A stretch of 64,000 bases of DNA from Podarcis muralis (taxonomy: Eukaryota), in NCBI RefSeq assembly GCF_964188315.1, contig NC_135667.1:15562001-15626000 (forward strand), read 5' to 3'. A program made the translations under genes and the position numbers. Below, piece by piece: positions 40,460 through 58,106 of the stretch. The notes under the pieces were generated by a model, which saw only the letters and a list, made by a program, of their open reading frames with translations, was not told the DNA's origin and searched no databases. How positions within the stretch are numbered: position 1 is the first letter of the stretch; each line of letters starts with the position of its first letter.

Positions 40460-40740
40460 TCATTGCCCTTCCAGGTCTTTCACGAGATGTGGGTTTTGGG
40501 CCTTCAGTGCCTCATACAGCATATCCTTGCACCGGAGGTCCCAGCTTGGCAGAAGCCTGTAGAGCTCTCGCATCTTGTCTGGGTTAGTTTCCTTGGCAGT
40601 GATTTTTTGGTATTGCTCCTCACTGAGGACGGAGCCATGCAAACTATCCAGCACTGGTTCCACTGGGATGGTCCGTTGGATTAACTCCTTCCTGTGCCGC
40701 TCAATGAAGTGCACTTTGGAAGAGTTTGGAAACTGCGGCC
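40460..40740 (-). CDS. Gene C terminal CARD exon
   Basis: HFIERHRKELIQRTIPVEPVLDSLHGSVLSEEQYQKITAKETNPDKMRELY...KDLEGQ*. Confidence 0.93.
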
Positions 40741-43069
40741 CTACTGGGAAAGAGAGAAAGAGAGAATCTTGCTAAAGGTTCACACCACAGGCTTAAGACT
40801 GGTTCCCCAACTCATTCCTTCTTCCCCCATGACCTGGGAATTGTAGTTCCATGAGGGGAGGGATCATGAACAGAGCATTCCCAGTAGCTCACCTGCCTAA
40901 AATTCCCAGAATTCATTGGGCAAAGCCATAACTGTTGAAGAAGTATAAAACTGAAATAAGTGAGAGCTGTTGGAAGGGAGCCAAGGCTGGGGCCAGCCCT
41001 ACGATTAGGGAGAGTGAGGTGGCATCATAATTTGGGGTATCATAAACGACAGCAAATTGTCAGGCAATTAATTCATTACTATTTCACATAGTATTATATT
41101 TAGCTTTATCTTTTCTTACTTTAAAGCCCAGGAATTGATAGAGGGTGGGACTGAATGACACTTGGAACCCCTCCAAACTCTACCAATTCTATGCTTCTAC
41201 TATTGTTGTTATCATTACTGAACCCAGCTTTCTTCCACAGAGGCAATTTTCCTCACTATCCAAATTCCACTATCCCCATATGGCCTAGGACCCTCATACT
41301 TATGGGACCTCCTCTCCTGGTATGCCTCGCGGAGGACCTTACAGTCCACAAACAATAACACCTTGGAGGTCCCGGGCCTCAAGGAGGTTAGACTGGCCTT
41401 CTCGGCCCTGGCCCCAGCCTGGGGGAACGCTATGTCGCAAGAGACCAGGGCCTTGCGGCACTTGACATCTTTCTGCAGGGCCTGCAAGATGGAGTTGTTC
41501 CTCCAGGCCTTTGGTCTGGGCCCAGTCTGACCCCCCTCTTTTTACAAGACCCTGCATGTAAGTGACCTCTCTCACTCCTCCAGCCGGGTCATATAAGACC
41601 AGTACAAATAACTGGGCCTGGTGAGCACTTAATGTTCCCAACCCCTATAGTTATAATTCGTGGGTTGCCATCATTCTGATCTTAACTTGTTTTTAAGCTG
41701 TATTTTAATCGATTGTTTGACTTTATGTTTTAATGTACTATATACTTTGATGTTAGCCACCCTGAGCCCAGTCCTGGACAGGGAGGGCTGGATATAAATA
41801 AAATTGATGATGATGATGATGATGCCATGAAAACCTTATCCACAAGGCCTCTGTCCTTGGAAGAAGACAAAGTTATGGAACGTTGTCTCACAGATTTATG
41901 AATTATGCTTACAGTATCACTTAATCACAAATGACAACAAGAGCAAGTAACAGTTCATATTTTAGGAACTGCCACTCACTTTAAAATTGAGAAGCTCACA
42001 CTGTAAAACCTAGAGTGAGGAGATCAATGTCAGCAAAAGCTGTTCTGCTTGCCGGATGGAACAATTCTCTTAGTTTCCCTCTGAACTGTGTTCTGCGGAT
42101 TATTGTGACCCTCCAGAGAGGACTTGAGGGAGAGGGACAAGGAGGATATTGAGGAGAAAGTCCCATTGCATTAGTGGGAGCCCTTCTGATGCCATGTCAG
42201 GTTAGTTGCATCTGGGTAAAAAATGTTCTTAAAAACCTAGGTGAGTTGAAAGATCTTCATCTGGCGCCAAACAAAACAATAAGCCCAGACAACCTTGTCT
42301 AAGAAGGCTGTTGAATAAAGTTACAGTGGTACCTTGGTTCTCAAACTCAATCCGTTACGGAAGTCGGTTCCAAAACCAAAGCATTCCAAAACAAAAGGTG
42401 CACTTTCCCATAGAAAGCAATGCAAAATGGATTAATCCATCCCAGACTTTTAAAAACAAGCCCTAAAACAGCAATTTAACATGAATTTTACTATCTAACG
42501 AGATCATTGGTCAATTAAATGAAAGCAATAATCAATGTAAGGTAAGGTAAGGTAAGGTAAGGTAAGGTAAGGTAAGGTAAGGTAAGGTAAAGGGACCCCT
42601 GACCATTAGGTCCAGTCGTGACCGACTCTGGGGTTGCGGTGCTCATCTTGCTTTATTGGCCAAGGGAGCTGGCGTACAGTCATGTGGCCAGCATGACTAA
42701 GCCACTTCTGGCGCACCAGAGCAGCGCACGGAAACGCCGTTTACCTTCCCGCTGGAGCGGTACCTAATTATCTACTTGCACTTTGATGTGCTTTCGAACT
42801 GCTAGGTTGGCAGGAGCAGGGATCGGGTAATGGGAGCTCACCCCATTGCGGGGATTTGAACCGCTGACCTTCTGATCGGCAAGTCCAAGGCTCTGTGGTT
42901 TAACCCACAGTGCCACCCACGTCCCTAATAATCAATGTACTGTACTATAAAAAAAGTAAGACAGTATTGTAGATGATTAAAAAAATAATAATTCTTACCT
43001 GCACTGATGATAGCCATTGTTTGGATGGGGGGCTTTTATCCATTTCTGCAGTCACACAATCTATCTATC

Positions 43070-43124
<55 letters not shown>

Positions 43125-46100
43125 ATCTATCTATCTATCTATCTATATCTATCAGTAGCTGAATTGGGTTCCACACAGTCACAAAAACAAATTAACCGGA
43201 AAAGCCTCAAAAACCAAAATGCAAAATAAATAGCAGAAACAAAAGTGCCAAACTTAATCCATTCCGAAAGTCTGTTTAACTTCCAAAATGTTTGAAAACC
43301 TAGGCGCAGCTTCTGATTGGTGCAGGCGCCCCAGAAACAATAGCCGACAGCCGCATCAGATGTTCGGTTTCCGAAAATTGTTCGAAAACCAGAACATTTA
43401 CTTCCGGGTTTTTGGCATTTGAGAACCTAGGCATTTGAGAACCAAGGTACCACTGTACAAAAGTTATTTTTCATTTTTGTGCAGTGTATGTTCTACTGTA
43501 TCACCAGCACTTCCTATTGGGAGGAAGATAAGATACAAGTACAATGAAAGAAACAACTAAAACCTGCTGACCTTGTGCTGGGTGTATAATAGGAGAAGCC
43601 ATCTGCCCTGAAGTTAACTCATCTGAAAATCAAGAAGAAAAAGTCAGTCAAAGAGGGAATGTGACCTGTGGTCCTTTTCCATCCTGCCTCCCAAGATATG
43701 ACTCAACCTCACGATCATCCCTTGTTCAAAACTCACTTTTTTTTAAATGGGCCTTCCAAACAACTTCAGTCGTGCCCTTCTTCATCAGGTAGAAGTTGAA
43801 CTTCTCTTGCATTTGTTCAGCAGACAGTTCTACATACTGCTGCAGTTTCTCTGCATCCAGGTATTGAAAATGCAGTTCCTGTGGGAAAGAATGAAACCTC
43901 TGTAGGTGTGAATCTGGTTTGGCCCAACCCACCATTCCAAGGGAGTCAGATTAAAGGGTGAAGAAGGATCCTCGTTGAATTTCTCCCATTCTCAGACTTC
44001 ACAGTCTTGGTTCTGCCCCATCAAAAAACCACCATCATCTTCATGTCTCACCTCAGGATTCACTGTGACATCCTCTGGAGTACTAAGAGAGACCTGAGAG
44101 CCAATCATCAGAGGTTTCAGGGTCACAGGGGGTTTCTCTATTCTCTTTGAATTTACTTCACGCTTATCGACCGCCTGGGAAGGGTAAAGAAAGTCACTTT
44201 TGACATACGCAGAGAGGGAACAAAATTTTTGGAAGACTAGATGCCTACAACATTCTTGGCATTGTAGCACCAGGTAATGCAGGAATGGGGAACCTGGTGT
44301 CCTCCAGATGTTGTTGGACTCATATCCTTCCCAACAAGCATGGGCCAAGGATGATGGGTTTCATAGTTCAAGAACATCTGCAGAGACACAGATTCTCCAT
44401 ATGCAATATAAAGAAAATTAAACCACTATGACAATAGAAACTAAAATGTGGAGTGGAGATTTCCTGGCCTCATGAGGAACTGAAGGAAGCCAAGGCTCTT
44501 GGACTGGGCAGCCTGGACTATAAAGTGGCCAAGAGGTACCATGAATCCTGGGTCCACCTGCATCTTCTCTTGATGAGACCATGCAGGAAACCACAGAAGC
44601 CATGAAACTTCATTATTTGAATGAAGCATAAGAAGACATTTTAAGGAAAAGTTTAAATTGAGAAGGCAATATGATAGTGTGCTTTATCTCCCATGTGCCA
44701 ACACTGCAAATCAGGAAGAATGTTTTTCCTCAGGAGTTATCTGAGAAAGCTCGTTACTACCAAGCTGATTCCTTAATGAACGAAGCAGTATTTGTTCATT
44801 GCTAAATACGTTTACTCTGAAGGAAGTGTTACTGATTTCAATGAAGGCTTCCAGGAGAATGTGCTTAGGATTTCACAAGTAAGTGACGACCCGTTTGTTT
44901 AGAGAACCAGACAGGCTGTGTAACAAATGAAAAGGGCATATTTCAATATTGGAAGAATCACTTTAAACCAACAGTGCCGGTGGGAAGCTAAGTAACCCAG
45001 CATTGGGCAACTTGTTAATCTTCTCTCTACTGGCATGTTGATGTTGGGTAGAAGAGATCAAGTCCAACAATTGTGCATAGTCGGGGTTAATATGATCAAG
45101 CAAATGATCCAGACAATCGGGAATACCAGAGATGGAGGTTCCTGGTTACCTTTATTATTGAAGGGTCATTGGGCAGAACGTACAGGTGAAATGTTGGCGT
45201 TTCCAGCTGAAGCCTATGATAGAGCAGTACGACAGTGTTGATCTTTTGCTTAAACCACTTTTTGAAAACGACTCCTAGGGAAGAGAACTTGGGGTTTTCC
45301 AACACAGCATGGTGAGGCTCCACTCTGTCTGGCTTCTCCAGCCTCATCTCCCCTTCAACAAAATGTGCAATGTAGACATGGGAACTGTCATCACCTGAAA
45401 AGACAAGCATGTTAGAAGTGGGAAAGTGACAAAAATATCATCACTTAACCCTCCCTATTTCATGCAAGTATTCATTTTCTCATTGTACTGTAATTTAAGA
45501 GGTTTATAACATCATTTCACAGGACAATATGCTTGCATGGCAGCTTAAAACAGAATGCAAATCACAGAAAATAATAAAACAGCACAGTTGGAACATTTTG
45601 AAAAATTGAAACAAATAACAAAAGTCTGGTATGCCAGCACTCCTGACCTCTAGAACCCACCCATAGCATTCTGGAAACATCAATGGACATTTAGGACTCC
45701 TCCTATTATGGTTATAATGCTGGAAACTTCTCCCCTGACATACCTTCAAGGCACAAGAAGTGAGGGATGCAAATGGATGCCACAGCCTCTGCTGCATCCA
45801 CCTTAAAGTTGAGCAGAGGGCCAGCGACATGCAACTCCTCAGTGTTCTGTTCTGCCAGGAGCTTCGGCCATGAATCAAAGTAGTATGTTAAGGTCACAGC
45901 TTCTTTCACTTCACATATGAGACCAGTATCATCGCACTGGAAGGAGCCAGCCTCAGTCGAGCGCACTCTGAATGGCACAAAGAGAAAGACGAAAAGGAAA
46001 AGGGGACCCCACTCGGTGTACCTTGGGATCTCAAATTTCAGCAGCTCCCTGAGCAATGCCAAAATTCAGCACCTTACCCATGCCTCTCGCACTCCATTCT

Positions 46101-49100
46101 GAATAATAGTTGTGGCATCTCCTGCAGAGACCCTCAGGCTCCACAGCTGAACTGGCCGTGCTCCCCTAAATTTGCCTTTGAATAGCTGACATTAGGGTTG
46201 TTGAACCAAACTGTGGGAATGTTGAGGGTGGCAAGAGAGGGTATATTGATTATTAATATCCTAACTTGCCCTAGCAAGTTTCTTTATTTAGCAAAGTGCA
46301 TTCTCCTTCTTACACAGCAGAAACTGGCTGCAGACTCGTGTGAGTCTCTTAAGACTATAGGCAATTCAATCTGGCTTGTCCAGATTGAGATGTATTCTAT
46401 TATTCCTGGTAAGACCCCTTTAGGTAAAGGTAAAGGACCCCTGACAGTTAAGTCCAGTCAAAGACGACTCTGGGGTTGCGGTGTTCATCTTGCTTTACTG
46501 GCCGAGAGAGCCGGCATTTGTCCGCAGACAGTTTTTCTGGGTCATGTGGCCAGCATGACTAAACCGCTTTTGGCAAAACCAGAGCGGCGCACGGAAATGC
46601 CATTTACTTTCCCACCAGAGCGGTACCTATTTATCCACTTGCACTTTGACCTGCTAGGTTGGCTGATTAAAGACCCCTTTAATCCCTCCTAAAAGAATAA
46701 AGACACTGCAGTCTTATTCATAAGTGCTAAAAAGTCGTTTACTTACATTCAAAGAGAACACGGTGTGAATCCTGAAGGCAGGCTTAAGGCTTAAAGTTAC
46801 AAGTATGTACAATGTGCATTTACCCCATATTGGGGAATAACCCAGTGCTGGCTGAGAGCCAGCAGTGCAGTCCAAGCTGGAAGCAGGTCAAAGGTGAAAG
46901 GTGAAAGAGAGAGGACGGGTGCATGACTTGGCCTCTTATCAGGTCTGGTAAGGTCACAACCACCTGCTAGTCACATGCAAGAGGAAGGATGCTCCAGCCA
47001 AGTGGACCCAACATTCCCCTGCATGTCCACTCTAGCAAAACAGGCAATGTTGTACTTGACTGCTCTGGTGGATTACATCCCACAAAAACTAGTAGAGAAG
47101 AACAAGATAAATTGATTTTGGGGCAATGGCAATAATGCCAAGGAAGGGACAGGGGACAAGAGGAGCTGAAATGACTCCCTTGCTTCAAGAAACTCATTGG
47201 GTTATCTTGGGCCAGTCACTGCCTCTTAGCCTAAAGTACGGTACCTCACAGAGTTGTGAGGGGAAAATGGAGAGGGGAAAACCATGCATGCCAACTTGAA
47301 CTCCTTGGGAGAAAGGTGGAATATTTTTAAGGAAGAGAAACAACAATTCCTCCAAAAATCCAAACTCCATATTTTTCACCTTTCTCAAACTCTGCATCCT
47401 TCTTTTGATGCTACCCCAACCTGAAAAGGGGGCGGGATATATACAACTGGAAGTTAGCAACAGCAGTGCTTCAATGTAATGTTTTTTTCCAGCTCTGCTC
47501 CATGGAACCAAGGAATTCCTCAGTGAAGACATCAGGAATGGTGGTTAAGCTTCCTTCAGAGAGAATTTGTCCACCACAACTGACCGTTCACTGCAATATG
47601 CAGATCACAGATGTACTCTGCGTAAGTTTTACCGAGAACCACCATATGTGGTGACTGTGAGACCCACAGAAACCAGATGTGCTCTGTTGGACAATTCAAA
47701 GTAGAAACCACTCCCTGAGGGGAGAATGTTTCAAAAGGTCTGAGAGAGATAGAGATGATAGAGATAGAGACAGAGATAGAGATAGAGAGATAGCGAGAGA
47801 GAGAGAGATCACACACCTGTAAGCTTCATGGCCCCTTTCTGAGTCCCAAACCACCTCTGGTTTTATTTTTTCTGGAATATCCTATAATGAAACCATAATC
47901 ATTCATGTAGATGCCAGAATCCATATCCCATCTGGAAACGGGGCATTATTGTCTGTTCCTAAGACCCTTGAGACCACACCCTTCTAAAACAGATGTGACA
48001 CAGGAAGATTCCACACTAAACCGGAATCACAGCATTAGAGTTCTGCAGTAGTGCAATGATCTTTTTAGATGGAAAGTGTTTAAGCACTGGAAAATATGGG
48101 ACGATTTGAAATGTGACATCAACTGGACCGCCCGTAAGGTAAGAGCGAGGCAAGATGATTCCCGACTAAATGGAAACACAGTGTGCTAAGTGTGCATTGC
48201 AATGACTCTCACCATGAGTTATTAGCACAAGGAAAAAGCTGTTTAGATGCAGCCTTATTTCCTGCTACCAGACTCTAGCTTTGAATAACAAATATGTAAA
48301 TAATTACCTAAGATGGGATAGTTGCTAACCTTAGGGGACTAGAAATTTAAATTCAGTGGCTTCACGTTAAAAATATCAACGTGTACCCTATTCCTGTGGG
48401 TGGGAAATGCACATCAAGACAGGTCAGTCCCTTACCTCACTGGGACACCGGCCACACGGCACACTTTCCCCAGAACCTGCTGAGTTCTCCATCTTCATGC
48501 TTCCTTCCCTCTGTAAATATGAGCAAAGCAAGATGATTCCCAACTAAATGTAAGCACAGCAAGGCAAGAAGATTCCACATGAAATTGGAATCACATAATT
48601 ACAATTGCGCAGAAATGCAATGCTTTGTTTTTTATTATTTTTTTAAGCACTAGGAGCAACCTGTTTGGAAACAGCCTTGTGGCTCAATACCAGCAATTAG
48701 TGCCGACTAGCAAGATGATTAATTAATGTACAAAAATACCTAAAGAGGGACAAGGGCTTTTTACAGTGCACAAGAAATTCAAATTCAGAACCTTTCTGTT
48801 AGAAGTACCAATATAGGCTTCATTATCATGGGTGGTCAATGCAAATGAGAAGAATGCCCACCCTTTACCTCACTGAGACACCAGTTGCTTGTGATAATCT
48901 CCCCAGAACCTACTGGGTTCTCCATCTTCATGCTTCTTTGTTCCCCTTCATATAAGGGGGATTCTGAGTGTGGTGCTGTAAAAGAATGACAATTATTTGC
49001 CTGCTATGACTTTTGGAAGTTGGTTTGCAGGGTGAACACATAAAAATACAGTATTTCTTAAGAACCCATAGGATGTGAAGAGTAGCGCCTTGTGTGAGGC

Positions 49101-52100
49101 CAAAATTCCCTCACCTCTCTCTTTCCATACTACTCAATTCACTATGTTATAGTTGCAAAGCCCTGCAGTACCCTCTAGGAACCAGTCTCACTGCCCAAAA
49201 TTCGCCTCTAGTGTGGATTGTGGCTAATGCCATGTTTCTGTCTCAGGGTTGGCCCAATACATTTTTCTACCTGAGGCAAACCAGAAAATACCCCCTATGC
49301 AACCTGATTAAGACACTGAACAGAAACCAGGTGATCACTACTACCCACTATGATCTTAGACACATCCTCTTAATCCTTAAAAAAAAAAAAAGATTTCTTC
49401 AGTGTTGTTGAGAGCACATTGAGCAGCAGGTTGGCCTTGGTGACTTCCAAAGTCTGTTCCAACCCCAAAATGCTGTTATTCCATTCAGAGCAAAAGCTCA
49501 GCCTTGGTCAACCTCGTGGTAGGGCCATCTCATCTCTCCTACTGACCTTGTTCTGGATGTGGGCCTGAAAACTTCAGCTCCTCTGAAAGAGACCAGGAAA
49601 GAGGCAGTCAGAGAGGGCATGTAGATGGGATGTCCTTTCCATCCTGCCTCCTGAGCTATGGCCCAACCTTGTGGTCCTCCCTCAGCCAAAGCTCACCTTG
49701 CCTCACATGGGCCTCCCAGACCAGTTCATTCGTGCTCCTCTCTATCAGGTTGAAGTTGAGCTTGTCTTGCGTGAATTCAGCACTGATTTCGAGGAACTGC
49801 TCCTCCATGTATTGAAGCTCCAGTTCCTGTGAAAAAGCTCTGTAGGTGTGAATGTGACTTACCGGTAACTGATGGACATTTTATCTCCAAATGCTGAGAA
49901 GAAGCTGAACTGAACTAGCAGACTTTACTCTGGGCATAATCACACTCAGACTCTGGGTTTAGGAGATGCAAACAGCCATGGTTGTTTTTGCATCTCAGCA
50001 GGAGAGACACCAAAAATGTCTCCTTTACCAAGATGAGGATGAAGAAAAAGGAAGTAGTAAATGACATATCAGTGTAGCACCTGAGAGGACGTCAGCACAG
50101 GTTAGGTCAGACAGGACAATCTAGGAAACCAGGAAGTCTCTGTCCTCCTCTGTCTCCCTTTCCCCATGCAGACATATCTGCCTCAAGTGCAAGCTGATGC
50201 ATCACACCACTTCCGATGTAATTCCCCCACCTCCCCACCATTCAAAAGGGGGTAAACAAAAGACTGAAGGGATCCTGGTTTGCTTCCTCCCATTGTTAAA
50301 AACCTCACAGCCTTGGTTCCCTCCAGGCAACCCCTGTAATCATCTCTGGTCTCCTACCTCAGGGCAGACTGTGACGCCATCTAAATTTTGGATGAAGACG
50401 CGAGAGCCAATCTTCAGAGGCTTGAGTGCTCCAGAGGGTTTTGGCAGTCTCCTTGAAGGCCACATTTCCTCAAATTTATAGACATTCTGGGAACGGCAAA
50501 CATGGTCACTTTGGAGACATGAAAGGAAGACACCAAATCTATGGAACACTGGGTCCCTTTGCTTACTCCTGGATCTCGGATAGAGAGAGATCCAAAAGAG
50601 ATGTCTCCTCTCCCAAGGATGGCATGGAGAAGAAGGAAGTAGAGGTCAGCAACCCAAAGAATTTCACTCTAGCCTGAAGGAAGGTCAGCAAAGGTTAAAG
50701 GACAGTCTAGGAAAACTTAGAGAGTCCTCTCTCTAACTACTTTCACCCATGCAGCTACATCAGCCTTCAGCACATACTGAGCTGCATCCCAGCACTTCCA
50801 ACAGAACAGGCATTCAATAGTATCATTGTTTTCATAATCAAAATCTGACTAATAATCTAGCCTGCCCGGAACACAAATCAGAGTTGGAGATTCTTAGTTA
50901 CCTTTCTTAGGGAAGAGTCATTGGGTAGGAGGTACAGGTGGAATTTTGGGACACCAGAGATTTCCAGCTCCTGATAGAGCAGTGCCATGGCGTGGACCAT
51001 TATCTTTCGCTTAAACAATGCCTTTTTGAAGATGACCCCACAGGTATAGAAGCGGGGGGCTTTCAATACAGCATGATACGGCTGCACGCGATCTGGCTTC
51101 TTCAGTCTCATCTTCCCTTCAACAAAATGTGCTATGTAGACATGGGAACTGTCTTTCCCTGAAAAGAAACACAAGGGAAACATGGGCAAACAGTTCACTA
51201 TACTGCAGACTTGAGTTTGGGTGAGAAAACTCACCCCTTCTCCCTTCCTGTTTAATGCAAGTCAAGCCACTGGCCTGATCCAGCAGACCCATTCTATGTT
51301 CTTAAGTGTTTATTTTGTTATCATAATCTAGAGGTGTTTTTAAAAGCCTGCATTACAGAGCAATGTCCTCCCAAAGCAAGTTACAGGACAAAATACAGTA
51401 TACAGTAAGTACAAAGTATAGTAAGTCAAAGAAAAAAGCAGAATTCTAGCAAAAAGACAGAATTCTTGCAAAATCAAAAGAAGCCACAAAAGGCAGATAA
51501 AGCATTGTGATCCACTGAACCAGCCCATAGCATTATTCAGCCAATAAGGAATGTACATGATAGACAAAAGGAAGAATCTTAAACAGGAATGGATATTACC
51601 ACTCTATTCTTGGAAGCTTTTCTTCCTACCATACCTGTGAGACACAAGAAGTGAGGGAAGTGAACTTCTGCCACAGCTTCTTCTGCATCCGCTTGGATGT
51701 TGAGCAAAGGACCAGCAACAGCCAGCTCTATCATTTGCCATTCGTGCAGGTGTTGAGTCCATGAATCAAAGTGGTATGTTATGGTCACAGCTCCCCTTAC
51801 CTTAAATATAAGATCAGTACAACAGCAAAGGAAGGAGCCAGCTTCAGTGAAGCAAAATCTGAAGGCGAGAAAGACAAAAGGTGTCGAAAGAGATTGATGC
51901 ATCTTCCTCTACTGTTACGGCTGATACTCTTATAAGCAATTTGTGGGTCGTGTCAAATGTGCTCTCTTGATAACAATGATCATTAGCAGTATTTCAGTCC
52001 AGCATTGACTGGAATTTTGGTACTTAACTTTTGGCTCTTCATCTGATACTGTGCTGTGGCATGGGCGAGGGGCAGGATTTATGTTAGGGGGTACATGCTT

Positions 52101-53856
52101 TATGTCCACTACTCATCTTCCACAGCGATGTGCACCCACAGGGGCAAGCAGAGTATGCCTAGAGAGCATCACAATGTGGGAGCATCACCATATCCATATG
52201 CAATGCAGAAAACATTCTCTGATGGAAGTACTACTCGCCTGTAAGTTTCATGGCTCCTTTGTGAATCCCAAACTTTCTCTGGTCTTATCTTTCCTGGAAG
52301 CTCCTATAACAAAGAATAAAGGGTCCGAATTGATACCATATTCCTCCTCCTATCTGAAAATAAGAACACCCACTATGACCACATCAAGGATCCCTTCTTG
52401 AGCTCCACTCCACAGCTCCACATTGCTAAAAGCTCTTTATACCTGCTGCATTCTGTATTCATTTTTAGTATAGTAATTAGACCTGTGCTGAATTCTGAAA
52501 TACTGTGTGAACTGCTGATCCATTAAAAAAAACAACTTTAAAAGAAGATATAATCTTCCAAAATATCTCATTATGGTGATTATAGCATGGCTGCAACCCA
52601 AACATCCATTAACATTTCATCCCCAAGTACTGATGAGGGGGAAGAAGGGTACACTGTGGGTTGGCACTTGGTGTCCATCCATACCAGATTCTCCCACTCT
52701 CCTTTCACCCAGAGAATTATTTCTGGAGACAACTGTGGACATGGCAATATTGGAAAGTACTGTACCACAATGCATGCAAATGAAGAAACATTTAAGCAGG
52801 AGGATTGAAATGTAACAAACAGCTGGACCCCCCACAAAATATGAGTGAGATTCCACACTAAACTAGAAACACAATGTGATAAGTGCCCTTTGTCCACTTG
52901 CCATGGTTTATTAGCACATGGAGCCCCCTGTTTTGATGCAGCCAGTACAACCCTTACCTCGCTGGGACACTGGATGCACATGACGCTTTCTCCAGGATCT
53001 TCAGAATGCTCCATTTTCTGGTTCCTCGTTTCCTTTCTGAATAGGAGGGATTCAGACTGCAGCACTGACTGGTCAGAAACCTGGACTTTATTTTTAAACC
53101 AATATGACTGTTGTGAAAATGAAGAAAGGTGCAAAAAATGACCTTGAGGAATAAGAATGACGTGAAGTCAAATCCACCCAGTACTGCAAATAGCAGGATC
53201 CGAACAGAAGCCGGACGTACCATTTCTAAACATTCCAGGAACCGACAACAAGCTTGTTCTCCCCTTTCCAGGATTATACTTAGCAATTTTTTGATTTTCT
53301 CTTTAGAATCTTTCTCCATTTTGAAAACATTCTTGTATTCTTGTAGTGTGATGACAGAGCAAGAGTGTAGGGTGTGCAAAACGAAGTCTAGGTCCTCTTC
53401 AAGAATTTCAATCAACTGTTCTCTTCCCTTGCAGATCATCTCATCACTAAAGAATGCGTATCTTTTCAACGACCTGTGGCAGAAACAGAAGCAGGGGAAG
53501 AACTGGAACCTGGTTAGGTGGCCAACTTGCAGCCAGTGGACCATCGGTAGCTCTCAGCTGCACACCCTGGGGCCCACCAAGACTTGGGGAACCTTGCCTT
53601 CTTTTCTTAGCCTTAAGCTGTGCAATTTCACCATCAATTTCACCTGGTGTGCCAGCAGGTGAAGAGGGAGCTAAAAGCGTACGTGTGAAATGAGCGGAGG
53701 GGAAAGTGGTGTGTGCAAGAGAGAGTGGGAATGAGAATTGTGAAGGTGGGTGTGTCTGTGCACATATCTGAGCAAGTGTGCAGCCCCCAACACACTACTC
53801 ACCTGCACACACAACCCTCAGGGATAAAAAGATTGCCCTGCTGTCCCCTATTCTAG

Positions 53857-53915
<59 letters not shown>

Positions 53916-56900
53916 ATTTATACCCTGTCCATCTGGCTGGGTTTCCCCAGCCACTCTGGGCAGCTCCCAAGAGAATATTAAAAACATGATAAAACATCAA
54001 ACATTAAAAACTTCCCTAAACAGGGCTGCCTTCAGATGTCTTCTAAAAGTCAGATAGTTGTTTATTTCCTTCCTTGACATCTGATGGGAATCTATTAAAA
54101 AGACTCCCTCGAATATCCTCCCAGCAACCCCAGTCAGTTCTTATCTTTAGTCCTTATCTTAGCATTATTATCTTTATATGGGCAGGATGGGGGAGGCTGA
54201 GAAACAGTCCACACAGTGGTTTCGTTGTAGAGGCAAGATCTGACTCGGACTTCCCTCTTTCACAGCTCACTATATTCCAGCGGCTCTGCACCTTTATGGT
54301 TGTGGAGTGAGGCTGGCTTGAAAAGTATCTGGCAGCCTGACAGCTTCAGCAGAAAATATGCACTTTGGTTTTACTGCCCAACGGTTGACTTAGAAAGTCA
54401 TCTGTGGGCAGGAAAGGGAAAGGTTCAACATGGTGATTTGAAAAATATTCTTTCTTCCAAGCAGCCTTTTCCTTTAAAAAGCACACACGAAATTAGTAAA
54501 TTGGCGCTAAAGCATTTATTTGTTTTAAGCAGAAGAGCTTGCTAAATTACTTATAATGTTTACAGTGGTACCTCGGGTTAAGTACTTAATTCGTTCCGGA
54601 GGTCCGTTCTTAACCTGAAACTGTTCTTAACCTGAAGGACCACTTGAGCTAATGGGGCCTCCTGCTGCCGCCGTGCAATTTCTGTTCTCATCCTGAAGCA
54701 AAGTTCTTAATCCGAGGTACTATTTCTGGGTTAGCAGAGTCTGTAACCTGAAGCGTATGTAACCTGAAGTGTATATAACCTTGAGGTACCACTGTGTGTG
54801 TGTGTGTATATATTTCAGATATATACGTTTCACTGATTTTACAATCATTTTGACATTTAAAAAATTTACTTCCTTCCCCTTCTTCATGCAGTTCCTTAAA
54901 TTTATTTTTAATATTTTCTGCATATCCAGATTAACTTAACTTACTCATTTATTTATCTTCTTTATATATATACTCTTATGTAGCTGCAGGTTGTTACAAT
55001 AATCCTGCCAGTGTTTTTATCTGTTTACAATTTATCTGTAAATATTCAATGAACCATTTCCATTCTTTTATATAAAAAAGTTTGTTATCTTGGTTTCTTA
55101 CTCTTCCGGTAAGTTTCTCCATTTCTGCATATTCCATAAGTCTTTGTATCCATTCTTCCTTTGCTTGGACTTCTTCTTCTTTCCATTTTTGGGCAAGTAA
55201 CATTCTTGTCATATAATGTTTAAAATTGAAGTGTTTTGCATTGAGAGTGTAGTTTGCTGTAGTGTTAACTGAGAGGGGAAAACACATTGCTAAAATGGTG
55301 GCTTCAGTCACTTAAGTAAAGTGTAGAAATTACCCTTTAGTGGCTCTTTCTGATGAAAGCAGTTCCTCCAGACCTTGAATAATTTTTGAAGACAATACTA
55401 CAGCTGTCCGATGCCTTGAAACATGCTTTTCAGGGGGTTGCTCTGCTGTTAGATATATTGAGAAAGTGAGTACACATAAACAGTTTTAGTTAATCAAACC
55501 CATGGCCTAGCTGAAGTTCTGCCAGAACCTTCAGGGCCAGGAGGCATATGTAAGCAGAGGGGAAGGGATAATATTGTTCTGAAGTGATGGCATTGATTTT
55601 ATAAAATCATTGTGAAACTTGAAGAGATACTGATTTCAGAGTCTTCCCTCCGATTTTGTCCAGAATACATATTCAGAATGCTGCACAGATTTGAGACACA
55701 CCCAAAGCCCTTCCAAGAAGCTTCCTTTACACCCAGCCCCACTCCTAGAAGAAGACCATCAGACTCAGCCAATGTTCTCCCTTCCAAGTTCCTTACCTTT
55801 CCCGATGAGACGAAAGAGCCATTCTGGCAAGGGCTCACATTCAATGGCCTTCAGCACCTCTGACACCACCTCCACAGAATAATCCTCAGCACAGTATGTA
55901 AGCAGCAATTCTGTGAGCTCCCAAAGATTTGCTTCCTCCAGCAACCCCTTGGGGATACTGACATAGCCTTCCTTGAAGGGGAACACGCTGAGTTTATCCT
56001 TGAACTTCTTCAGATCTGACTCCTTCAAGGTTTTCAGGGTGACCAGCAGGCATAGATGTGTAATCCTTACTGTTGGAATTATTGGTGTTAGTAGCAGTAT
56101 TGAACAGAAAAAACCCAGCCTACATTCCCCTTCCCCTTCTCTTCCTGTTGGAAAACCTTGAATAGGTAGCACTAAGTGGGAAAGGGCCGTGGATCAGTGG
56201 TAGATCACATGCATACAAAGGATCCCAGGTTGAATCCCTGGAATCTCCAGATAGGGCTGGGAAATATTCCTGCCTAAAACCTTGGAATGAGCTGGACCAA
56301 CTGGTCCAATGTGCCCTAAGGCAGCTTTCCATCTTTCTATGATTTCCAATGATTCCAGCAATTCAGCCTGACTCAGAAGACAGAAAAAACTCCAAGGGGG
56401 TTAGGAAGGCCTGAAGACTCTCTTAATTTACACGCCTCTTCTTAGCTATTTGCAGGCTTCAAACATGAAGGAAAGAAGACTGCATTCCACAAGGAAAAAT
56501 CTGAACCCCAAGTCCAAAGGACCACAAGAAATTCATGTAAACTGTTTCTTTGCTGTTCTCTGCATCCTAAGATGAAGATACCGTATTTGCAATTTATTAA
56601 GCATTGGCAAGGGACACAGGTGGCGCTGTGGGTTAAACCACAGAGCCCAGGACTTGCCGATCAGAAGGTCAGTCGTTCGAATCCTCACGACGGGGTGAGC
56701 TCCCATTGCACAGTCCCAGCTCCTGCCAACCTAGCCGTTCAAAAGCACGTCAAAGTGCAAGTAGATAAATAGGTACCGCTCTGGCGGGAAGGTAAATGGC
56801 GTTTCCGTACACTGCTCTGGTTTGTGAGAAGCGGCTTAGTCATGCTGGCCACATGATCCGGAAGCTGTACCCCGGCTCCCTCGGCCAATAAAGCGAGATG

Positions 56901-58106
56901 AGCGCCGCAACCCCAGAATCGGCCACAACTGGACCTAATGGTCAGGGGTCCCTTTACCTTTACCTTTAAGCATTGGCAATCCGATTGTTGAAAGCTGCTG
57001 AGAATTGCTGCCATCAGCCAAAAGCTTTCTATAGAAAACAGTGCATGTACTAAAAATATCTCAGCTTGATATTTTTTGTTATTTATTGCTGCACTTTGGG
57101 GCTAGGCTAATCTAGGAGCAGGGAGTCTCAAGCCCTGTGGCCAAATGGGCTCCTCTAGACCCCTCCTTCAAGCCCTTGGAATGCTCCCCAGGCCACACCC
57201 CTCACTGACCCCGCCTGGAAACCCTCCTGGGGTGTCTCTGCCTTCCTGAAATGGGGCCTTGAGCTCCGATCAGGGCTGGCGCACTCATGAGGCAAGGTGA
57301 GGCATGATCCACAGGGGCAGCAGATCCCAATGCAGATCGTTATTCCCCACCTTGTTCCTGATGTTCCTTCTTCCCTGGTGGGGAGCCATTTTTCTTCTTT
57401 CGCCTCAGGCGCTAAACTCTCTTGGGGCAGCCCTAGCTCCGATAATGCTTCTTTCTAGTCTAGATGGAGGGCAGAGGGATGTGTGAAAACACTAGCCCAC
57501 TTTACACAGGTAACAGTGACACCCATCATTCTGCTCCCTTTCACTGCTGGTCTTGCCTTTGCTGGAAAAGTTGCCCCACCCCTGGGCGACTACAGCCATG
57601 GGAAGGAGCTGTGCTGTCAGTACAAACAGAACCCCGAGGTGTCACCACCACCAGCCAGATGGATCCACCCCTCTCCGGAGATCCTTACTTAGCCTGATGA
57701 AAACAAAGAGAGAGCCCACCGGGGGCTTGTAGTCCATCGCCTGCAGCACCAGCGCCGTCACCTCCACGGCATAAGCCTCGCCATAGTACTGGATTAATAG
57801 ATCCCTGAGCTGCCGAGCATCGGCTTCCCTCAGCAACCTTTTGGGGATTCTTCCGACGCCCTCCTTGACCGGGAATCTGAGCAGTTCGCCCTTGAATTTC
57901 CTCCAGTCCTCGTCCCGCAAGTCCAGCAAGGTGCCCAGAAGGAGGAGAGGGGCGCAGTGAATCGCCCAAGGCTGCGGCTCCAGAAAGAGCGAGGGACCCG
58001 CTTTGGGCAGCCGCGTCGCGGGGAAAAGGCTGCCCTCGTCGTCCCCCTTTCTTGGGGGAGCTGTGAAGGAGAGGGCCGGGAGATTGAGGACGATCTTCTT
58101 CGACAT
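40460..58106 (-). CDS. Gene C: PYD - PYD - CARD - CxxC - FIIND1 (F-Y) - CxxC - FIIND2 (F-S) - CARD protein, up to ~1096 aa
   Basis: Exons 58106-57689, 56069-55797, [53670-53598 tentative], 53473-53221, 53107-52958, 52303-52239, 51858-51635, 51158-50902, 50486-50358, 49826-49697, 49582-49547, 48945-48869, 48510-48436, 47881-47817, 45967-45744, 45394-45150, 44174-44052, 43878-43737, 43622-43572, 40740-40460. The chain 53473-40460 is phase-consistent; the PYD2-to-CARD link is uncertain. Confidence 0.7.
42586..42925 (-). mobile_element. Sauria-type SINE with (GTAAG)n tail (42537-42590), nested in a Tigger-like element
   Basis: Reverse complement of the SINE consensus seen elsewhere in the window. 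Confidence 0.85.
43060..43150. repeat. (TATC)n microsatellite
   Basis: Directly visible. Confidence 0.95.
43737..44174 (-). CDS. Gene C FIIND2 UPA exons (44174-44052, 43878-43737)
   Basis: AVDKREV...KPLMIGSQ; ELHFQY...EVVWKAHLKK. Confidence 0.86.
45150..45394 (-). CDS. Gene C FIIND2 exon with canonical site (ENPKF-SSLG)
   Basis: IAHF...LEKPDRVEPHHAVLENPKFSSLGV...FHLYVLPND. Confidence 0.92.
45744..45967 (-). CDS. Gene C FIIND2 ZU5 exon
   Basis: EAGSFQC...VAGPLLNFK...IPHFLCL. Confidence 0.92.
46212..47084 (-). mobile_element. Solo LTR (inverted) with nested Sauria SINE fragment (46421-46665)
   Basis: tgtgggaatg...acatcccaca; near-TSD caaac/aaaac. Confidence 0.7.
48436..48945 (-). CDS. Gene C duplicated inter-FIIND linker exons (48945-48869, 48510-48436)
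   Basis: GEQRSMKMENPVGSGEIITSNWCLSE and REGSMKMENSAGSGESVPCGRCPSE; phases 1-0 and 0-0. Confidence 0.7.
49697..50486 (-). CDS. Gene C FIIND1 UPA exons (50486-50358, 49826-49697)
   Basis: NVYKFEE...KPLKIGSR; ELELQYMEEQF...ELVWEAHVRQ. Confidence 0.86.
50902..51158 (-). CDS. Gene C FIIND1 exon with non-canonical site (APRF-YTCG)
   Basis: IAHF...LKKPDRV...HAVLKAPRFYTCGV...FHLYLLPNDSS. Confidence 0.92.
51635..51858 (-). CDS. Gene C FIIND1 ZU5 exon
   Basis: EAGSFLC...VAGPLLNIQA...FPHFLCL. Confidence 0.92.
53221..53473 (-). CDS. Gene C internal CARD exon (different type from the terminal CARD)
   Basis: EMICKGREQLIEILEEDLDFVLHTLHSCSVITLQEYKNV...KIKKLLSIILERGEQACCRFLECL fits the CARD pattern. Confidence 0.85.
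53857..53915. repeat. (CAA)n microsatellite
   Basis: Directly visible; tail of a LINE-like fragment. Confidence 0.95.
54800..55230 (-). mobile_element. L1 3' fragment
   Basis: MLLAQKWK...EEWIQRLMEYAEMEKLTGRVR. Confidence 0.7.
55797..56069 (-). CDS. Gene C second PYD exon (phase 1-1)
   Basis: LLVTLKTLKESDLKKFKDKLSVFPFKEGYVSIPKG...; TACTAAC branch point, ccaacag acceptor, G|GTAAGG donor; 273 nt. Confidence 0.85.
56610..56968 (+). mobile_element. Sauria-type SINE
   Basis: Full-length; flanked by repeated ttaagcattggcaa. Confidence 0.88.
57689..58106 (-). CDS. Gene C exon 1: short extension plus first PYD
   Basis: LLLGTLLDLRDEDWRKFKGELLRFPVKEGVGRIPKRLL...YAVEVTALVL; phase-1 donor A|GTAAGG. 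Confidence 0.82.

What the first reader, a model, noticed from the sequence alone, without database searches (positions are those of the whole stretch)
49697..51158. First FIIND of gene C is predicted autocleavage-dead (Ser to Tyr) and has an altered UPA
Seen: HAVLKAPRF-YTCG replaces ENPKF-SS; the His is retained; UPA exon 49826-49697 is 12 nt shorter than in gene B; there are no stops. Known: the Ser nucleophile (NLRP1 S1213, CARD8 S297) is required for autoproteolysis. Inferred: a pseudo-catalytic FIIND maintained for a structural or inhibitory role.
Basis: partly seen in the sequence, partly recalled or inferred. Interest (0 to 1): 0.76.

Follow-up and report, generated by a model that had tools for sequence, protein, structure and literature searches.

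The report
Dead first FIIND in lizard sensor
A wall-lizard inflammasome-sensor gene carries two self-cleaving FIIND modules in a row; the first has lost the residues needed to cut itself, yet it is expressed, keeps its predicted fold and has been preserved by selection in at least four lizard species, so it is a natural uncleavable FIIND inside a working sensor.

Summary
The window is Podarcis muralis. Gene C is RefSeq LOC114582834 ("uncharacterized protein"), and the window reproduces its isoform X2 exactly: PYD-PYD-CARD-FIIND1-linkers-FIIND2-CARD.

- **Dead catalytic site.** FIIND1 (52303-49697, minus strand) reads PRF|YTCG where about 96% of some 190 other FIINDs read F|S. It also has Lys at the catalytic Glu (NLRP1 E1195, CARD8 E279). 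In Lacerta agilis the catalytic His is also lost.
- **Altered UPA.** The last UPA exon lacks 12 nt, a 4-residue loop deletion found in none of 40 other FIINDs.
- **Not an error.** The Tyr is present in two P. muralis assemblies, and no difference is listed at its codon in RNA contigs of two studies or in one more DNA run. It is also in P. lilfordi, P. raffonei and L. agilis.
- **Expressed.** RNA contigs show every splice junction from the N-terminal CARD through FIIND1 into FIIND2, in one frame.
- **Selection and fold.** dN/dS of FIIND1 is 0.13-0.38, like FIIND2. The AlphaFold model matches rat NLRP1 FIIND (TM 0.88).
- **Origin.** FIIND1 and FIIND2 belong to different paralog lineages, so this is a fusion, not a recent duplication.

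The "maintained pseudo-catalytic FIIND" reading is supported; its inhibitory role is inferred by analogy with uncleaved NLRP1. No searched paper contains the phrase "tandem FIIND". The scan has not noted this on other DNA.

The parts
52239..52303 (-). FIIND1 exon a (start of ZU5). It is followed by a GC donor at 52238-52237.
   Evidence: Spliced walk reproduces XP_077774051.1. The junction 52239|51858 with a GC..AG intron is seen in RNA contigs of runs X1 and X5.
51635..51858 (-). FIIND1 exon b (ZU5 core, ...TEAGSFLCCCTDLIFKVRGAVTITYHFDSW...FPHFLCLTG).
   Evidence: The junction to exon c is seen in X1 and X5.
50902..51158 (-). FIIND1 exon c: end of ZU5, the former cleavage site and the start of UPA. 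His codon 51129-51127; Lys at the catalytic-Glu position 51102-51100; Phe 51051-49; Tyr (in place of the Ser nucleophile) 51048-46.
   Evidence: No difference is listed at the Tyr codon in X1, X5 or X15, which all cover it.
50358..50486 (-). FIIND1 exon d (UPA).
   Evidence: Junctions on both sides are seen in RNA contigs.
49697..49826 (-). FIIND1 exon e (end of UPA), 130 nt. It is 12 nt shorter than its paralogues, which gives a 4-residue loop deletion after ELELQY.
49547..49582 (-). Linker exon K1 (EELKFSGPHPEQ). It is the homologue of the post-UPA exon that precedes the CARD exon in single-FIIND relatives.
   Evidence: Junctions 49697|49582 and 49547|48975 are seen. The comparison with P0003 was done by eye on the sequence printed.
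48869..48975 (-). Linker exon K2, a copy of the 'MKMEN..G.GE..C..SE' exon that precedes each ZU5.
48436..48510 (-). Linker exon K3, a second copy of the same exon type.
43737..47881 (-). FIIND2: five exons (47881-47817, 45967-45744, 45394-45150, 44174-44052, 43878-43737). It keeps the His, Glu and PKF|SS site (Phe876|Ser877 of the 1119-aa protein).
40460..43622 (-). Post-UPA exon (43622-43572) and the C-terminal CARD exon (40740-40460, stop included).
52958..58106 (-). N-terminal part of the same gene: PYD (58106-57689), PYD (56069-55797), exon 55445-55334, CARD (53473-53221) and linker exon L1 (53107-52958).
   Evidence: The CARD|L1 and L1|FIIND1a junctions are seen in RNA contigs.

Best explanation
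FIIND1 is a catalytically dead but structurally intact ZU5-UPA module. It sits inside the N-terminal part of a CARD8-like, NACHT-less inflammasome sensor of lacertid lizards: PYD-PYD-CARD-FIIND1-FIIND2-CARD, RefSeq LOC114582834.

Shown here: the Ser nucleophile is Tyr and the catalytic Glu is Lys. The domain is transcribed and spliced in frame between the N-terminal CARD and FIIND2. The Tyr is fixed in four species. The domain evolves under purifying selection as strong as that on FIIND2.

Inferred: FIIND1 does not cut itself, and only FIIND2 (His, Glu and F876|S877 intact) does. The mature protein would then be an 876-residue N-fragment that contains the whole of FIIND1, held non-covalently to a 243-residue UPA-CARD fragment. 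As in NLRP1 and CARD8, destruction of the N-fragment would free the UPA-CARD to signal.

Most likely role of FIIND1 (inferred by analogy): it is a built-in, permanently uncleaved FIIND. It would hold or sequester the UPA-CARD fragment through its ZU5 and UPA surfaces, possibly together with DPP8/9, and so raise the threshold for firing.

Origin (from the tree): an older PYDn-CARD-FIIND-CARD gene lost its own C-terminal CARD and was spliced onto the FIIND-CARD of a neighbouring paralogue.
For: - **Site alignment.** PRF|Y aligns with PSF|S of the solved FIINDs. In 191 FIIND matches P1' is Ser in 183 and Tyr in 3, and those 3 are this orthologue group.
- **Catalytic residues in the literature.** H1186/E1195/S1213 are described as the catalytic triad (10.1101/2020.08.14.246132). 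S1213A and S297A abolish cleavage, H270A is crucial and E279A reduces it (PMC3210808).
- **Decay of the triad.** The orthologues show K/N/K/G at the Glu position and His-to-Cys in Lacerta.
- **Transcription.** Every junction from CARD through FIIND1 to FIIND2 exon a is seen in contigs of two RNA-sized runs from two studies. All four RefSeq isoforms keep both FIINDs.
- **Conservation.** All 20 exons and their splice sites are intact in P. lilfordi, P. raffonei and L. agilis.
- **Selection.** FIIND1 dN/dS is 0.13-0.38, and the bootstrap share with dN/dS at or above 1 is at most 0.011. Exon divergence is 3.5% against 6.2% for the introns.
- **Fold.** AlphaFold2 gives pLDDT 89; TM 0.88 to rat NLRP1 FIIND and 0.83 to CARD8 FIIND.
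[quoted passage not shown] - **Tree.** The FIIND1 clade sits on a long stem (0.29) apart from the lacertid expansion that holds FIIND2. No CARD relic lies between the two FIINDs.
Against: - No protein data exist. Non-cleavage and any inhibitory role are inferred.
- dN/dS below 1 would also follow from selection merely against misfolding of an internal domain.
- DPP9-contact residues known from human NLRP1 (L1193, E1190, the HKPP loop) are not well conserved in either lizard FIIND (alignment), so the DPP9 part of the model is weak.
- The 4-residue deletion lies just before the strand that forms the UPA-UPA contact in NLRP1. It could weaken that contact rather than serve it.
- In the P. lilfordi assembly FIIND2 carries an in-frame stop. 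If real, the gene is dispensable there.
- The RNA evidence is from assembled contigs, not raw reads. The one raw-read run laid gave no reads.
Confidence: 0.7

Rival explanations
1. Passenger relic of a gene fusion. FIIND1 lost catalysis, and the upstream gene lost its CARD and became spliced onto the neighbour's FIIND-CARD. FIIND1 is carried along with no function of its own. Its conservation reflects only the cost of a misfolded internal domain or of disturbed splicing.
For: - FIIND1 and FIIND2 come from different paralog lineages.
- K1 is the post-UPA exon type, and K2 and K3 look like the exon that precedes ZU5 in neighbouring genes.
- The catalytic positions drift. The 33-residue catalytic segment holds 6 of 23 variable sites, against 2 of 32 in FIIND2 (Fisher p 0.047, weak).
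- P. lilfordi FIIND2 has a stop, which hints that the gene is dispensable.
Against: - dN/dS of FIIND1 is as low as or lower than that of FIIND2 and the PYDs.
- Skipping FIIND1 would keep the frame: L1 ends and K3 and FIIND2a begin at phase 0 (exon lengths). Yet no isoform or RNA contig skips it.
- Outside the active site the domain departs from the family consensus at only 9 well-conserved positions, an ordinary number.
Confidence: 0.22
2. FIIND1 still cuts itself using a neighbouring nucleophile: Thr537 in Podarcis, Ser in Lacerta, or the following Cys. The protein would then be processed twice, as PIDD1 is.
For: A hydroxyl residue follows the Tyr in all four species (YT, YT, YT, YS) and a Cys follows that. 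Ser, Thr and Cys can all serve in N-O/N-S acyl shifts (PMC3210808).
Against: - The Ser after the nucleophile and the Cys look ancestral, not compensatory: Rhineura has PSF|SSCG.
- A one-residue register shift on a beta-strand turns the side chain to the other face, away from the His/Glu pocket and the Phe anchor (inference).
- The Glu is lost in all four species and the His in Lacerta, which is not expected if catalysis were under selection.
Confidence: 0.05
3. The Tyr is a sequencing or assembly error, or a rare allele.
For: None found.
Against: - The Tyr is present in the window.
- It is also in the model from the older P. muralis annotation, XP_028559985.1, which carries other allelic differences.
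- Three runs cover the codon and list no difference there, although each carries other SNPs in the same exon.
- It is present in P. lilfordi, P. raffonei and L. agilis.
Confidence: 0.01

Closest known systems
Human CARD8 and NLRP1 / rodent NLRP1 FIIND (ZU5-UPA) sensors
   Same: Same fold and family: Pfam FIIND plus UPA-FIIND, phmmer E 7e-39 to CARD8, TM 0.83-0.88. FIIND2 followed by a CARD has the complete His/Glu/F|S apparatus. The gene has no NACHT-LRR, as in CARD8.
   Different: There are two FIINDs in one chain, the first without the Ser nucleophile or the Glu. The N-terminus is PYD-PYD-CARD rather than a disordered region (CARD8) or PYD-NACHT-LRR (NLRP1).
Engineered NLRP1-S1213A / CARD8-S297A (uncleavable full-length forms)
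   Same: FIIND1 is a FIIND that cannot cut itself. The S1213A full-length protein occupies 'site A' with DPP9, captures the free UPA-CARD and damps cell death. FIIND1 could do the same.
   Different: FIIND1 is natural, fixed in several species, and placed in cis in the same chain as a cleavable FIIND. The substitution is Tyr, with further loss of the Glu and a 4-residue UPA loop deletion.
Mouse Nlrp1b allele 3 (naturally uncleaved FIIND)
   Same: A natural FIIND that is not processed (PMC3334886).
   Different: In the mouse allele the whole sensor is unresponsive and the nucleophile itself is kept. Here a second, intact FIIND follows, so the sensor can still be armed.
PIDD1 (ZU5-ZU5-UPA with two HF|S sites) and ankyrin/UNC5 ZU5-UPA tandems
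   Same: Repeated ZU5-type modules in one chain. Ankyrin and UNC5 ZU5-UPA are non-cleaving structural supramodules, and they appear as weaker fold matches (3g5b, 4d8o).
   Different: PIDD1 cuts at both sites and has one UPA. Here two complete ZU5-UPA units are present, of the FIIND subtype, and one is dead.
Pogona vitticeps LOC110086381 (PYD-FIIND-FIIND-CARD)
   Same: Also a tandem-FIIND protein in a squamate, with a divergent first FIIND (Glu replaced by Arg, long branch).
   Different: It arose independently: its two FIINDs group with Pogona paralogues. Both keep the Ser. There is no N-terminal CARD. It is known only as a RefSeq model and was not checked against RNA here.

Membership tests
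FIIND (ZU5-UPA) domain family, Pfam PF13553 + PF23679 | Sequence match to the FIIND and UPA-FIIND profiles over the full length | tested here: met
   P0152, which equals the window's protein, matches PF13553 with two stretches (E 1.6e-78) and PF23679 with two stretches. FIIND1 alone gives phmmer E 7e-39 to CARD8 and 1e-36 to rat NLRP1 over residues 15-283 of a 288-residue query.
FIIND (ZU5-UPA) domain family, Pfam PF13553 + PF23679 | ZU5-UPA fold | tested here: met
   AlphaFold2 model with pLDDT 89 and pTM 0.86. Foldseek gives TM 0.88 and rmsd 2.4 A to 7crw_A, and TM 0.83 to 7jn7_B.
Autoproteolytic FIIND (functional class of NLRP1/CARD8) | Ser (or Thr/Cys) nucleophile at P1' after the anchoring Phe | tested here: not met
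   Tyr536 stands at P1'. The Phe is kept.
Autoproteolytic FIIND (functional class of NLRP1/CARD8) | Catalytic His (H1186/H270) and Glu (E1195/E279) | tested here: not met
   The His is present in the three Podarcis species but is Cys in Lacerta. The Glu is replaced by Lys, Asn, Lys and Gly in the four species.
Autoproteolytic FIIND (functional class of NLRP1/CARD8) | Observed cleavage into two associated fragments | not testable with these tools
   This needs protein expression and immunoblot or mass spectrometry.
CARD8-type sensor (FIIND-CARD without NACHT-LRR, armed by functional degradation) | A cleavage-competent FIIND directly followed by a C-terminal CARD, with no NACHT or LRR | tested here: met
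   FIIND2 has His850, Glu859 and F876|S877, and is followed by a CARD at 1037-1119. Pfam finds no NACHT or LRR.
CARD8-type sensor (FIIND-CARD without NACHT-LRR, armed by functional degradation) | Release of UPA-CARD on N-terminal degradation; restraint by DPP8/9 | not testable with these tools
   No functional data exist. Human DPP9-contact residues are only partly conserved in the alignment.

The most novel reading that the evidence does not exclude
FIIND1 is a cis-encoded checkpoint. As a permanently uncleaved FIIND it plays the part that a second, full-length NLRP1 molecule plays in the mammalian NLRP1-DPP9 ternary complex ('site A'). One lizard polypeptide would then carry both the armed module (FIIND2-CARD) and its own safety catch. 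The same solution may have arisen more than once in squamates, since Pogona also has a tandem-FIIND gene.
Probability: 0.25. Interest if true: 0.8.

Novelty: new variant of a known kind. Interest (0 to 1): 0.62.

Why it matters
FIIND self-cleavage is the step that arms NLRP1 and CARD8. The uncleaved form has so far been studied mainly as an engineered mutant, which turned out to restrain the active fragment. Here nature has fixed an uncleavable FIIND in the same chain as a cleavable one and kept it under selection across lizard genera. That gives a ready-made system to ask three things:

- what an uncleaved FIIND does;
- whether ZU5-UPA modules can regulate one another in cis;
- how new sensor architectures arise by fusion inside fast-evolving CARD8-like gene clusters.

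It also shows that RefSeq "uncharacterized" squamate genes hold FIIND layouts (tandem FIIND, and GTPase-FIIND-CARD in skinks) that the paper searches run here did not turn up.

Tried and rejected
- **Raw-read RNA run X21** gave no reads on the 6-kb stretch, so it is no test. Strand, depth and rare isoforms therefore remain unknown.
- **Odd non-canonical joints** (51153>51759, 51662>51759) are cross-laid contigs of FIIND2 or paralogue mRNA. The loose end reads the FIIND2 exon b/c junction, and I rejected them as FIIND1 splice forms.
- **Recent internal duplication** as the origin was rejected by the tree and by roughly 56-62% identity between the two FIINDs.
- **A relic CARD exon** between FIIND1 and FIIND2 was not found (tblastn, best E 0.11).
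- **Further Tyr-type orthologues.** Two word-index searches and the full HMMER search found none beyond Podarcis and Lacerta. Zootoca proteins found are FIIND2-like or other paralogues. Look-ups of P. raffonei P0011 and Zootoca P0164 found no gene on record, and P. raffonei was reached through P0165 instead.
- **P0001 (Rhineura) and P0021** have two FIINDs, but each has a CARD after the first FIIND. They look like merged gene models, not tandem FIINDs.
- **Enrichment of substitutions around the dead active site** is only weakly significant (p 0.047) and is reported as suggestive.
- **Spliced model.** No typed spliced model was sent to any search tool. Searches used single exons by reference or the databases' own protein ids. 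Exons were joined only inside local scripts.
Full report
**What is there.**
The stretch 51158-49697 holds three minus-strand exons with clean AG/GT borders.
- They translate to the end of a ZU5 domain, the FIIND cleavage-site region and a UPA domain.
- phmmer of the first exon against all PDB chains finds only rat NLRP1, human NLRP1 and human CARD8. It aligns PRF-Y of the window with PSF-S of all three, so a Tyr stands exactly where the nucleophilic Ser stands. The full domain gives E 7e-39 to CARD8.
- The window has three more such exons on the same strand, reading PKF|SS, PKF|SS and PKL|SP.
- The last UPA exon (49826-49697, 130 nt) lacks exactly 12 nt present in all three paralogues. Among 41 aligned FIINDs from reptiles, turtles and mammals only this one has that 4-residue gap.
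- By the alignment to human NLRP1, the missing residues correspond to R1312-G1315. This is the loop between Y1311 (a DPP9 contact of the free UPA) and strand beta8 with D1317/L1319/E1322 (the UPA-UPA contact of the uncleaved FIIND).

**The gene.**
An HMMER search of the exon against 1.8 billion representative proteins, followed by a word-index search, led to Podarcis muralis XP_077774051.1 (LOC114582834 isoform X2, 1119 aa, "uncharacterized protein").
- A spliced walk along the window reproduces this protein residue for residue from 20 coding exons between 58106 and 40460. The window is therefore P. muralis and the gene is already annotated.
- Pfam gives two PYDs, a CARD, FIIND+UPA twice and a C-terminal CARD, with no NACHT or LRR.
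- FIIND1 has His509, Lys518 and Phe535-Tyr536. FIIND2 has His850, Glu859 and Phe876|Ser877.

**Is it transcribed, and is the Tyr real?**
Contigs of two RNA-sized public runs from two studies were laid on 47500-53499.
- They show every junction of the chain: CARD exon | 53107-52958 | 52303-52239 | 51858-51635 | 51158-50902 | 50486-50358 | 49826-49697 | 49582-49547 | 48975-48869 | 48510-48436 | 47881...
- All introns are GT-AG except one GC-AG, which is used. The chain is one open frame.
- The three runs that cover the Tyr codon (two RNA, one genome-sized DNA run) list no difference at 51046-51048. They do carry other differences in the same exon. In X1 these are two amino-acid changes, four synonymous changes and an in-frame 3-nt deletion that removes the Gly of ELEISGVPKF.
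- The older P. muralis annotation (XP_028559985.1) carries that same allele and also the Tyr.
- All four current RefSeq isoforms keep both FIINDs.
- A raw-read RNA run gave no reads and is no test.

**Other species.**
- The P. lilfordi protein CAI5791025.1 has the same layout and PRF|YTCG.
- Lacerta agilis XP_033024257.1 reads PSF|YSCG, with Cys for the catalytic His and Gly for the Glu.
- I fetched the loci of L. agilis, P. lilfordi and P. raffonei. All 20 exons are present in each, with splice sites kept and lengths equal or differing by multiples of three. FIIND1 is open in all four and Tyr is in all four.
- Among 191 FIIND matches in the 185 proteins then held, P1' is Ser 183 times, Cys twice, Gly once and Tyr three times. 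The three Tyr cases are this orthologue group.

**Selection.**
Nei-Gojobori dN/dS with codon bootstraps gave the following:

| Region | dN/dS range over the six species pairs |
|---|---|
| FIIND1 | 0.13-0.38 (share of bootstrap replicates at or above 1: at most 0.011) |
| FIIND2 | 0.24-0.42 |
| PYD region | 0.12-0.40 |
| Linker exons K1-K3 | 0.25-0.98 |
| Last small exon plus C-terminal CARD | 0.41-1.44 |

- FIIND1 exons differ by 3.5% between P. muralis and L. agilis, and the introns between them by 6.2%.
- Because all four species share the Tyr, this constraint has acted after the loss of the nucleophile.
- Within FIIND1, the 33 residues from the His to the former site hold 6 of the 23 variable positions, including the His and Glu positions. 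The same segment of FIIND2 holds 2 of 32. The contrast is only weakly significant, but it fits relaxation at the active centre alone.
- FIIND1 departs from strongly conserved family positions at nine sites, an ordinary number. Two of them are the catalytic Glu and Ser.
- AlphaFold2 on the 41-sequence alignment gives pLDDT 89 and pTM 0.86. The model superposes on rat NLRP1 FIIND (TM 0.88) and human CARD8 FIIND (TM 0.83).

**Origin.**
- In a maximum-likelihood tree of 50 FIINDs, the four FIIND1 sequences form a fully supported clade on a long stem (0.29 changes per column). The clade lies weakly beside a Rhineura FIIND.
- FIIND2 is nested in a lacertid-specific expansion of CARD8-like paralogues. 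The two halves are therefore not a recent internal duplication.
- Rhineura LOC133365898 has PYDx4-CARD-FIIND-CARD, with a single Ser-bearing FIIND whose site exon is 80% identical to FIIND1.
- Exon K1 after FIIND1 is the homologue of the small exon that normally precedes the CARD exon.
- K2 and K3 are two copies of the exon type that precedes each ZU5. No CARD relic lies between the FIINDs.
- The simplest history is a fusion: the older gene lost its own CARD and was spliced onto a neighbour's FIIND-CARD.

**How it most likely works.**
Published work calls H1186, E1195 and S1213 the catalytic triad. It shows that S1213A and S297A abolish cleavage, that H270 is crucial and that E279A reduces cleavage. 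The acyl shift needs a Ser, Thr or Cys side chain next to the scissile bond, and a Tyr cannot supply it.

I therefore infer the following sequence.
1. FIIND1 stays uncut and only FIIND2 cleaves.
2. This gives an 876-residue N-fragment that includes the whole of FIIND1, and a 243-residue UPA-CARD fragment.
3. Uncleaved NLRP1-S1213A captures free UPA-CARD with DPP9 and damps cell death.
4. [quoted passage not shown]

By analogy, FIIND1 is best read as a built-in uncleaved FIIND that helps to hold the active fragment in check. This last step is inference. The human DPP9-contact residues are not clearly kept, and the loop deletion lies next to the UPA-UPA contact strand, with unknown effect.

**Rivals.**
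- A functionless passenger domain kept only to avoid misfolding cannot be excluded. It fits less well, because constraint equals that on FIIND2 and in-frame skipping is never seen.
- Cleavage at the neighbouring Thr/Ser or Cys is unlikely, because the rest of the triad is decaying.
- An error or rare allele is excluded.

**Novelty.**
The gene model exists in RefSeq without a name. A full-text search of about 8.4 million papers found none with the phrase "tandem FIIND". A survey of inflammasome genes that includes P. muralis is counted per gene and does not describe this layout in the passages searched. Natural uncleaved FIINDs are known (mouse Nlrp1b allele 3), but I found no description of one retained in cis with a live FIIND. 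I rate it a new variant of a known kind. The scan's earlier notes on this genome record the tandem frame (s1-175885), but nothing like it on other DNA.

Noticed in passing
L002:17797-18020 (P. lilfordi, FIIND2 exon b): The P. lilfordi assembly has CAG>TAG at exon position 118, an in-frame stop inside FIIND2 (LLEE*NTEE). The deposited protein CAI5791025.1 skips the surrounding residues. This is either a real disabling allele in this island species or an assembly error.
   Followed up: partly
window 43622-43572 and 40740-40460: The last small exon plus the C-terminal CARD of gene C evolve with dN/dS of 0.41-1.44 among four lacertids, unlike the rest of the gene (0.1-0.4). This points to relaxed or diversifying selection on the signalling CARD.
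   Followed up: partly
window 52238-52237: The intron after FIIND1 exon a has a GC donor in P. muralis and P. raffonei and a GT donor in P. lilfordi and L. agilis. RNA contigs show that the GC donor is used.
   Followed up: yes
window 50953-50955: The Gly of ELEISGVPKF is a P. muralis polymorphism. One RNA run (X1), the older RefSeq model and all three other species lack these 3 nt.
   Followed up: yes
window 53473-52958: The N-terminal CARD exon is spliced to 53107-52958 in frame in RNA contigs of two studies. The PYD-PYD-CARD part therefore continues into FIIND1 without any frame switch.
   Followed up: partly
window 16379-16128 (gene A): Gene A's cleavage site reads PKL|SPCG, with Leu instead of the anchoring Phe, and has Gln at the catalytic-Glu position. 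Its self-cleavage may be weakened too.
   Followed up: no
P0154 (Pogona vitticeps LOC110086381): This is an independent PYD-FIIND-FIIND-CARD protein. Its first FIIND is divergent (Glu replaced by Arg, long branch) but keeps the Ser. Its second FIIND is nearly identical to another Pogona paralogue. It is known only as RefSeq models.
   Followed up: partly
P0004 (Lerista), P0166 (Tiliqua), P0032 (Pogona): Skinks have PYD-CARD-URGCP GTPase-FIIND-CARD proteins, with a GTPase in the place of NACHT-LRR. Pogona P0032 has FIIND-PYD-URGCP, and its FIIND has Tyr for the catalytic His and Gly for the Ser, so it is a second naturally dead FIIND.
   Followed up: no
window 48975-48869 and 48510-48436: Two tandem copies of the 'MKMEN..G.GE..C..SE' exon are both spliced into the mRNA. 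Each contains in-frame ATGs that could start a shorter FIIND2-CARD product.
   Followed up: no
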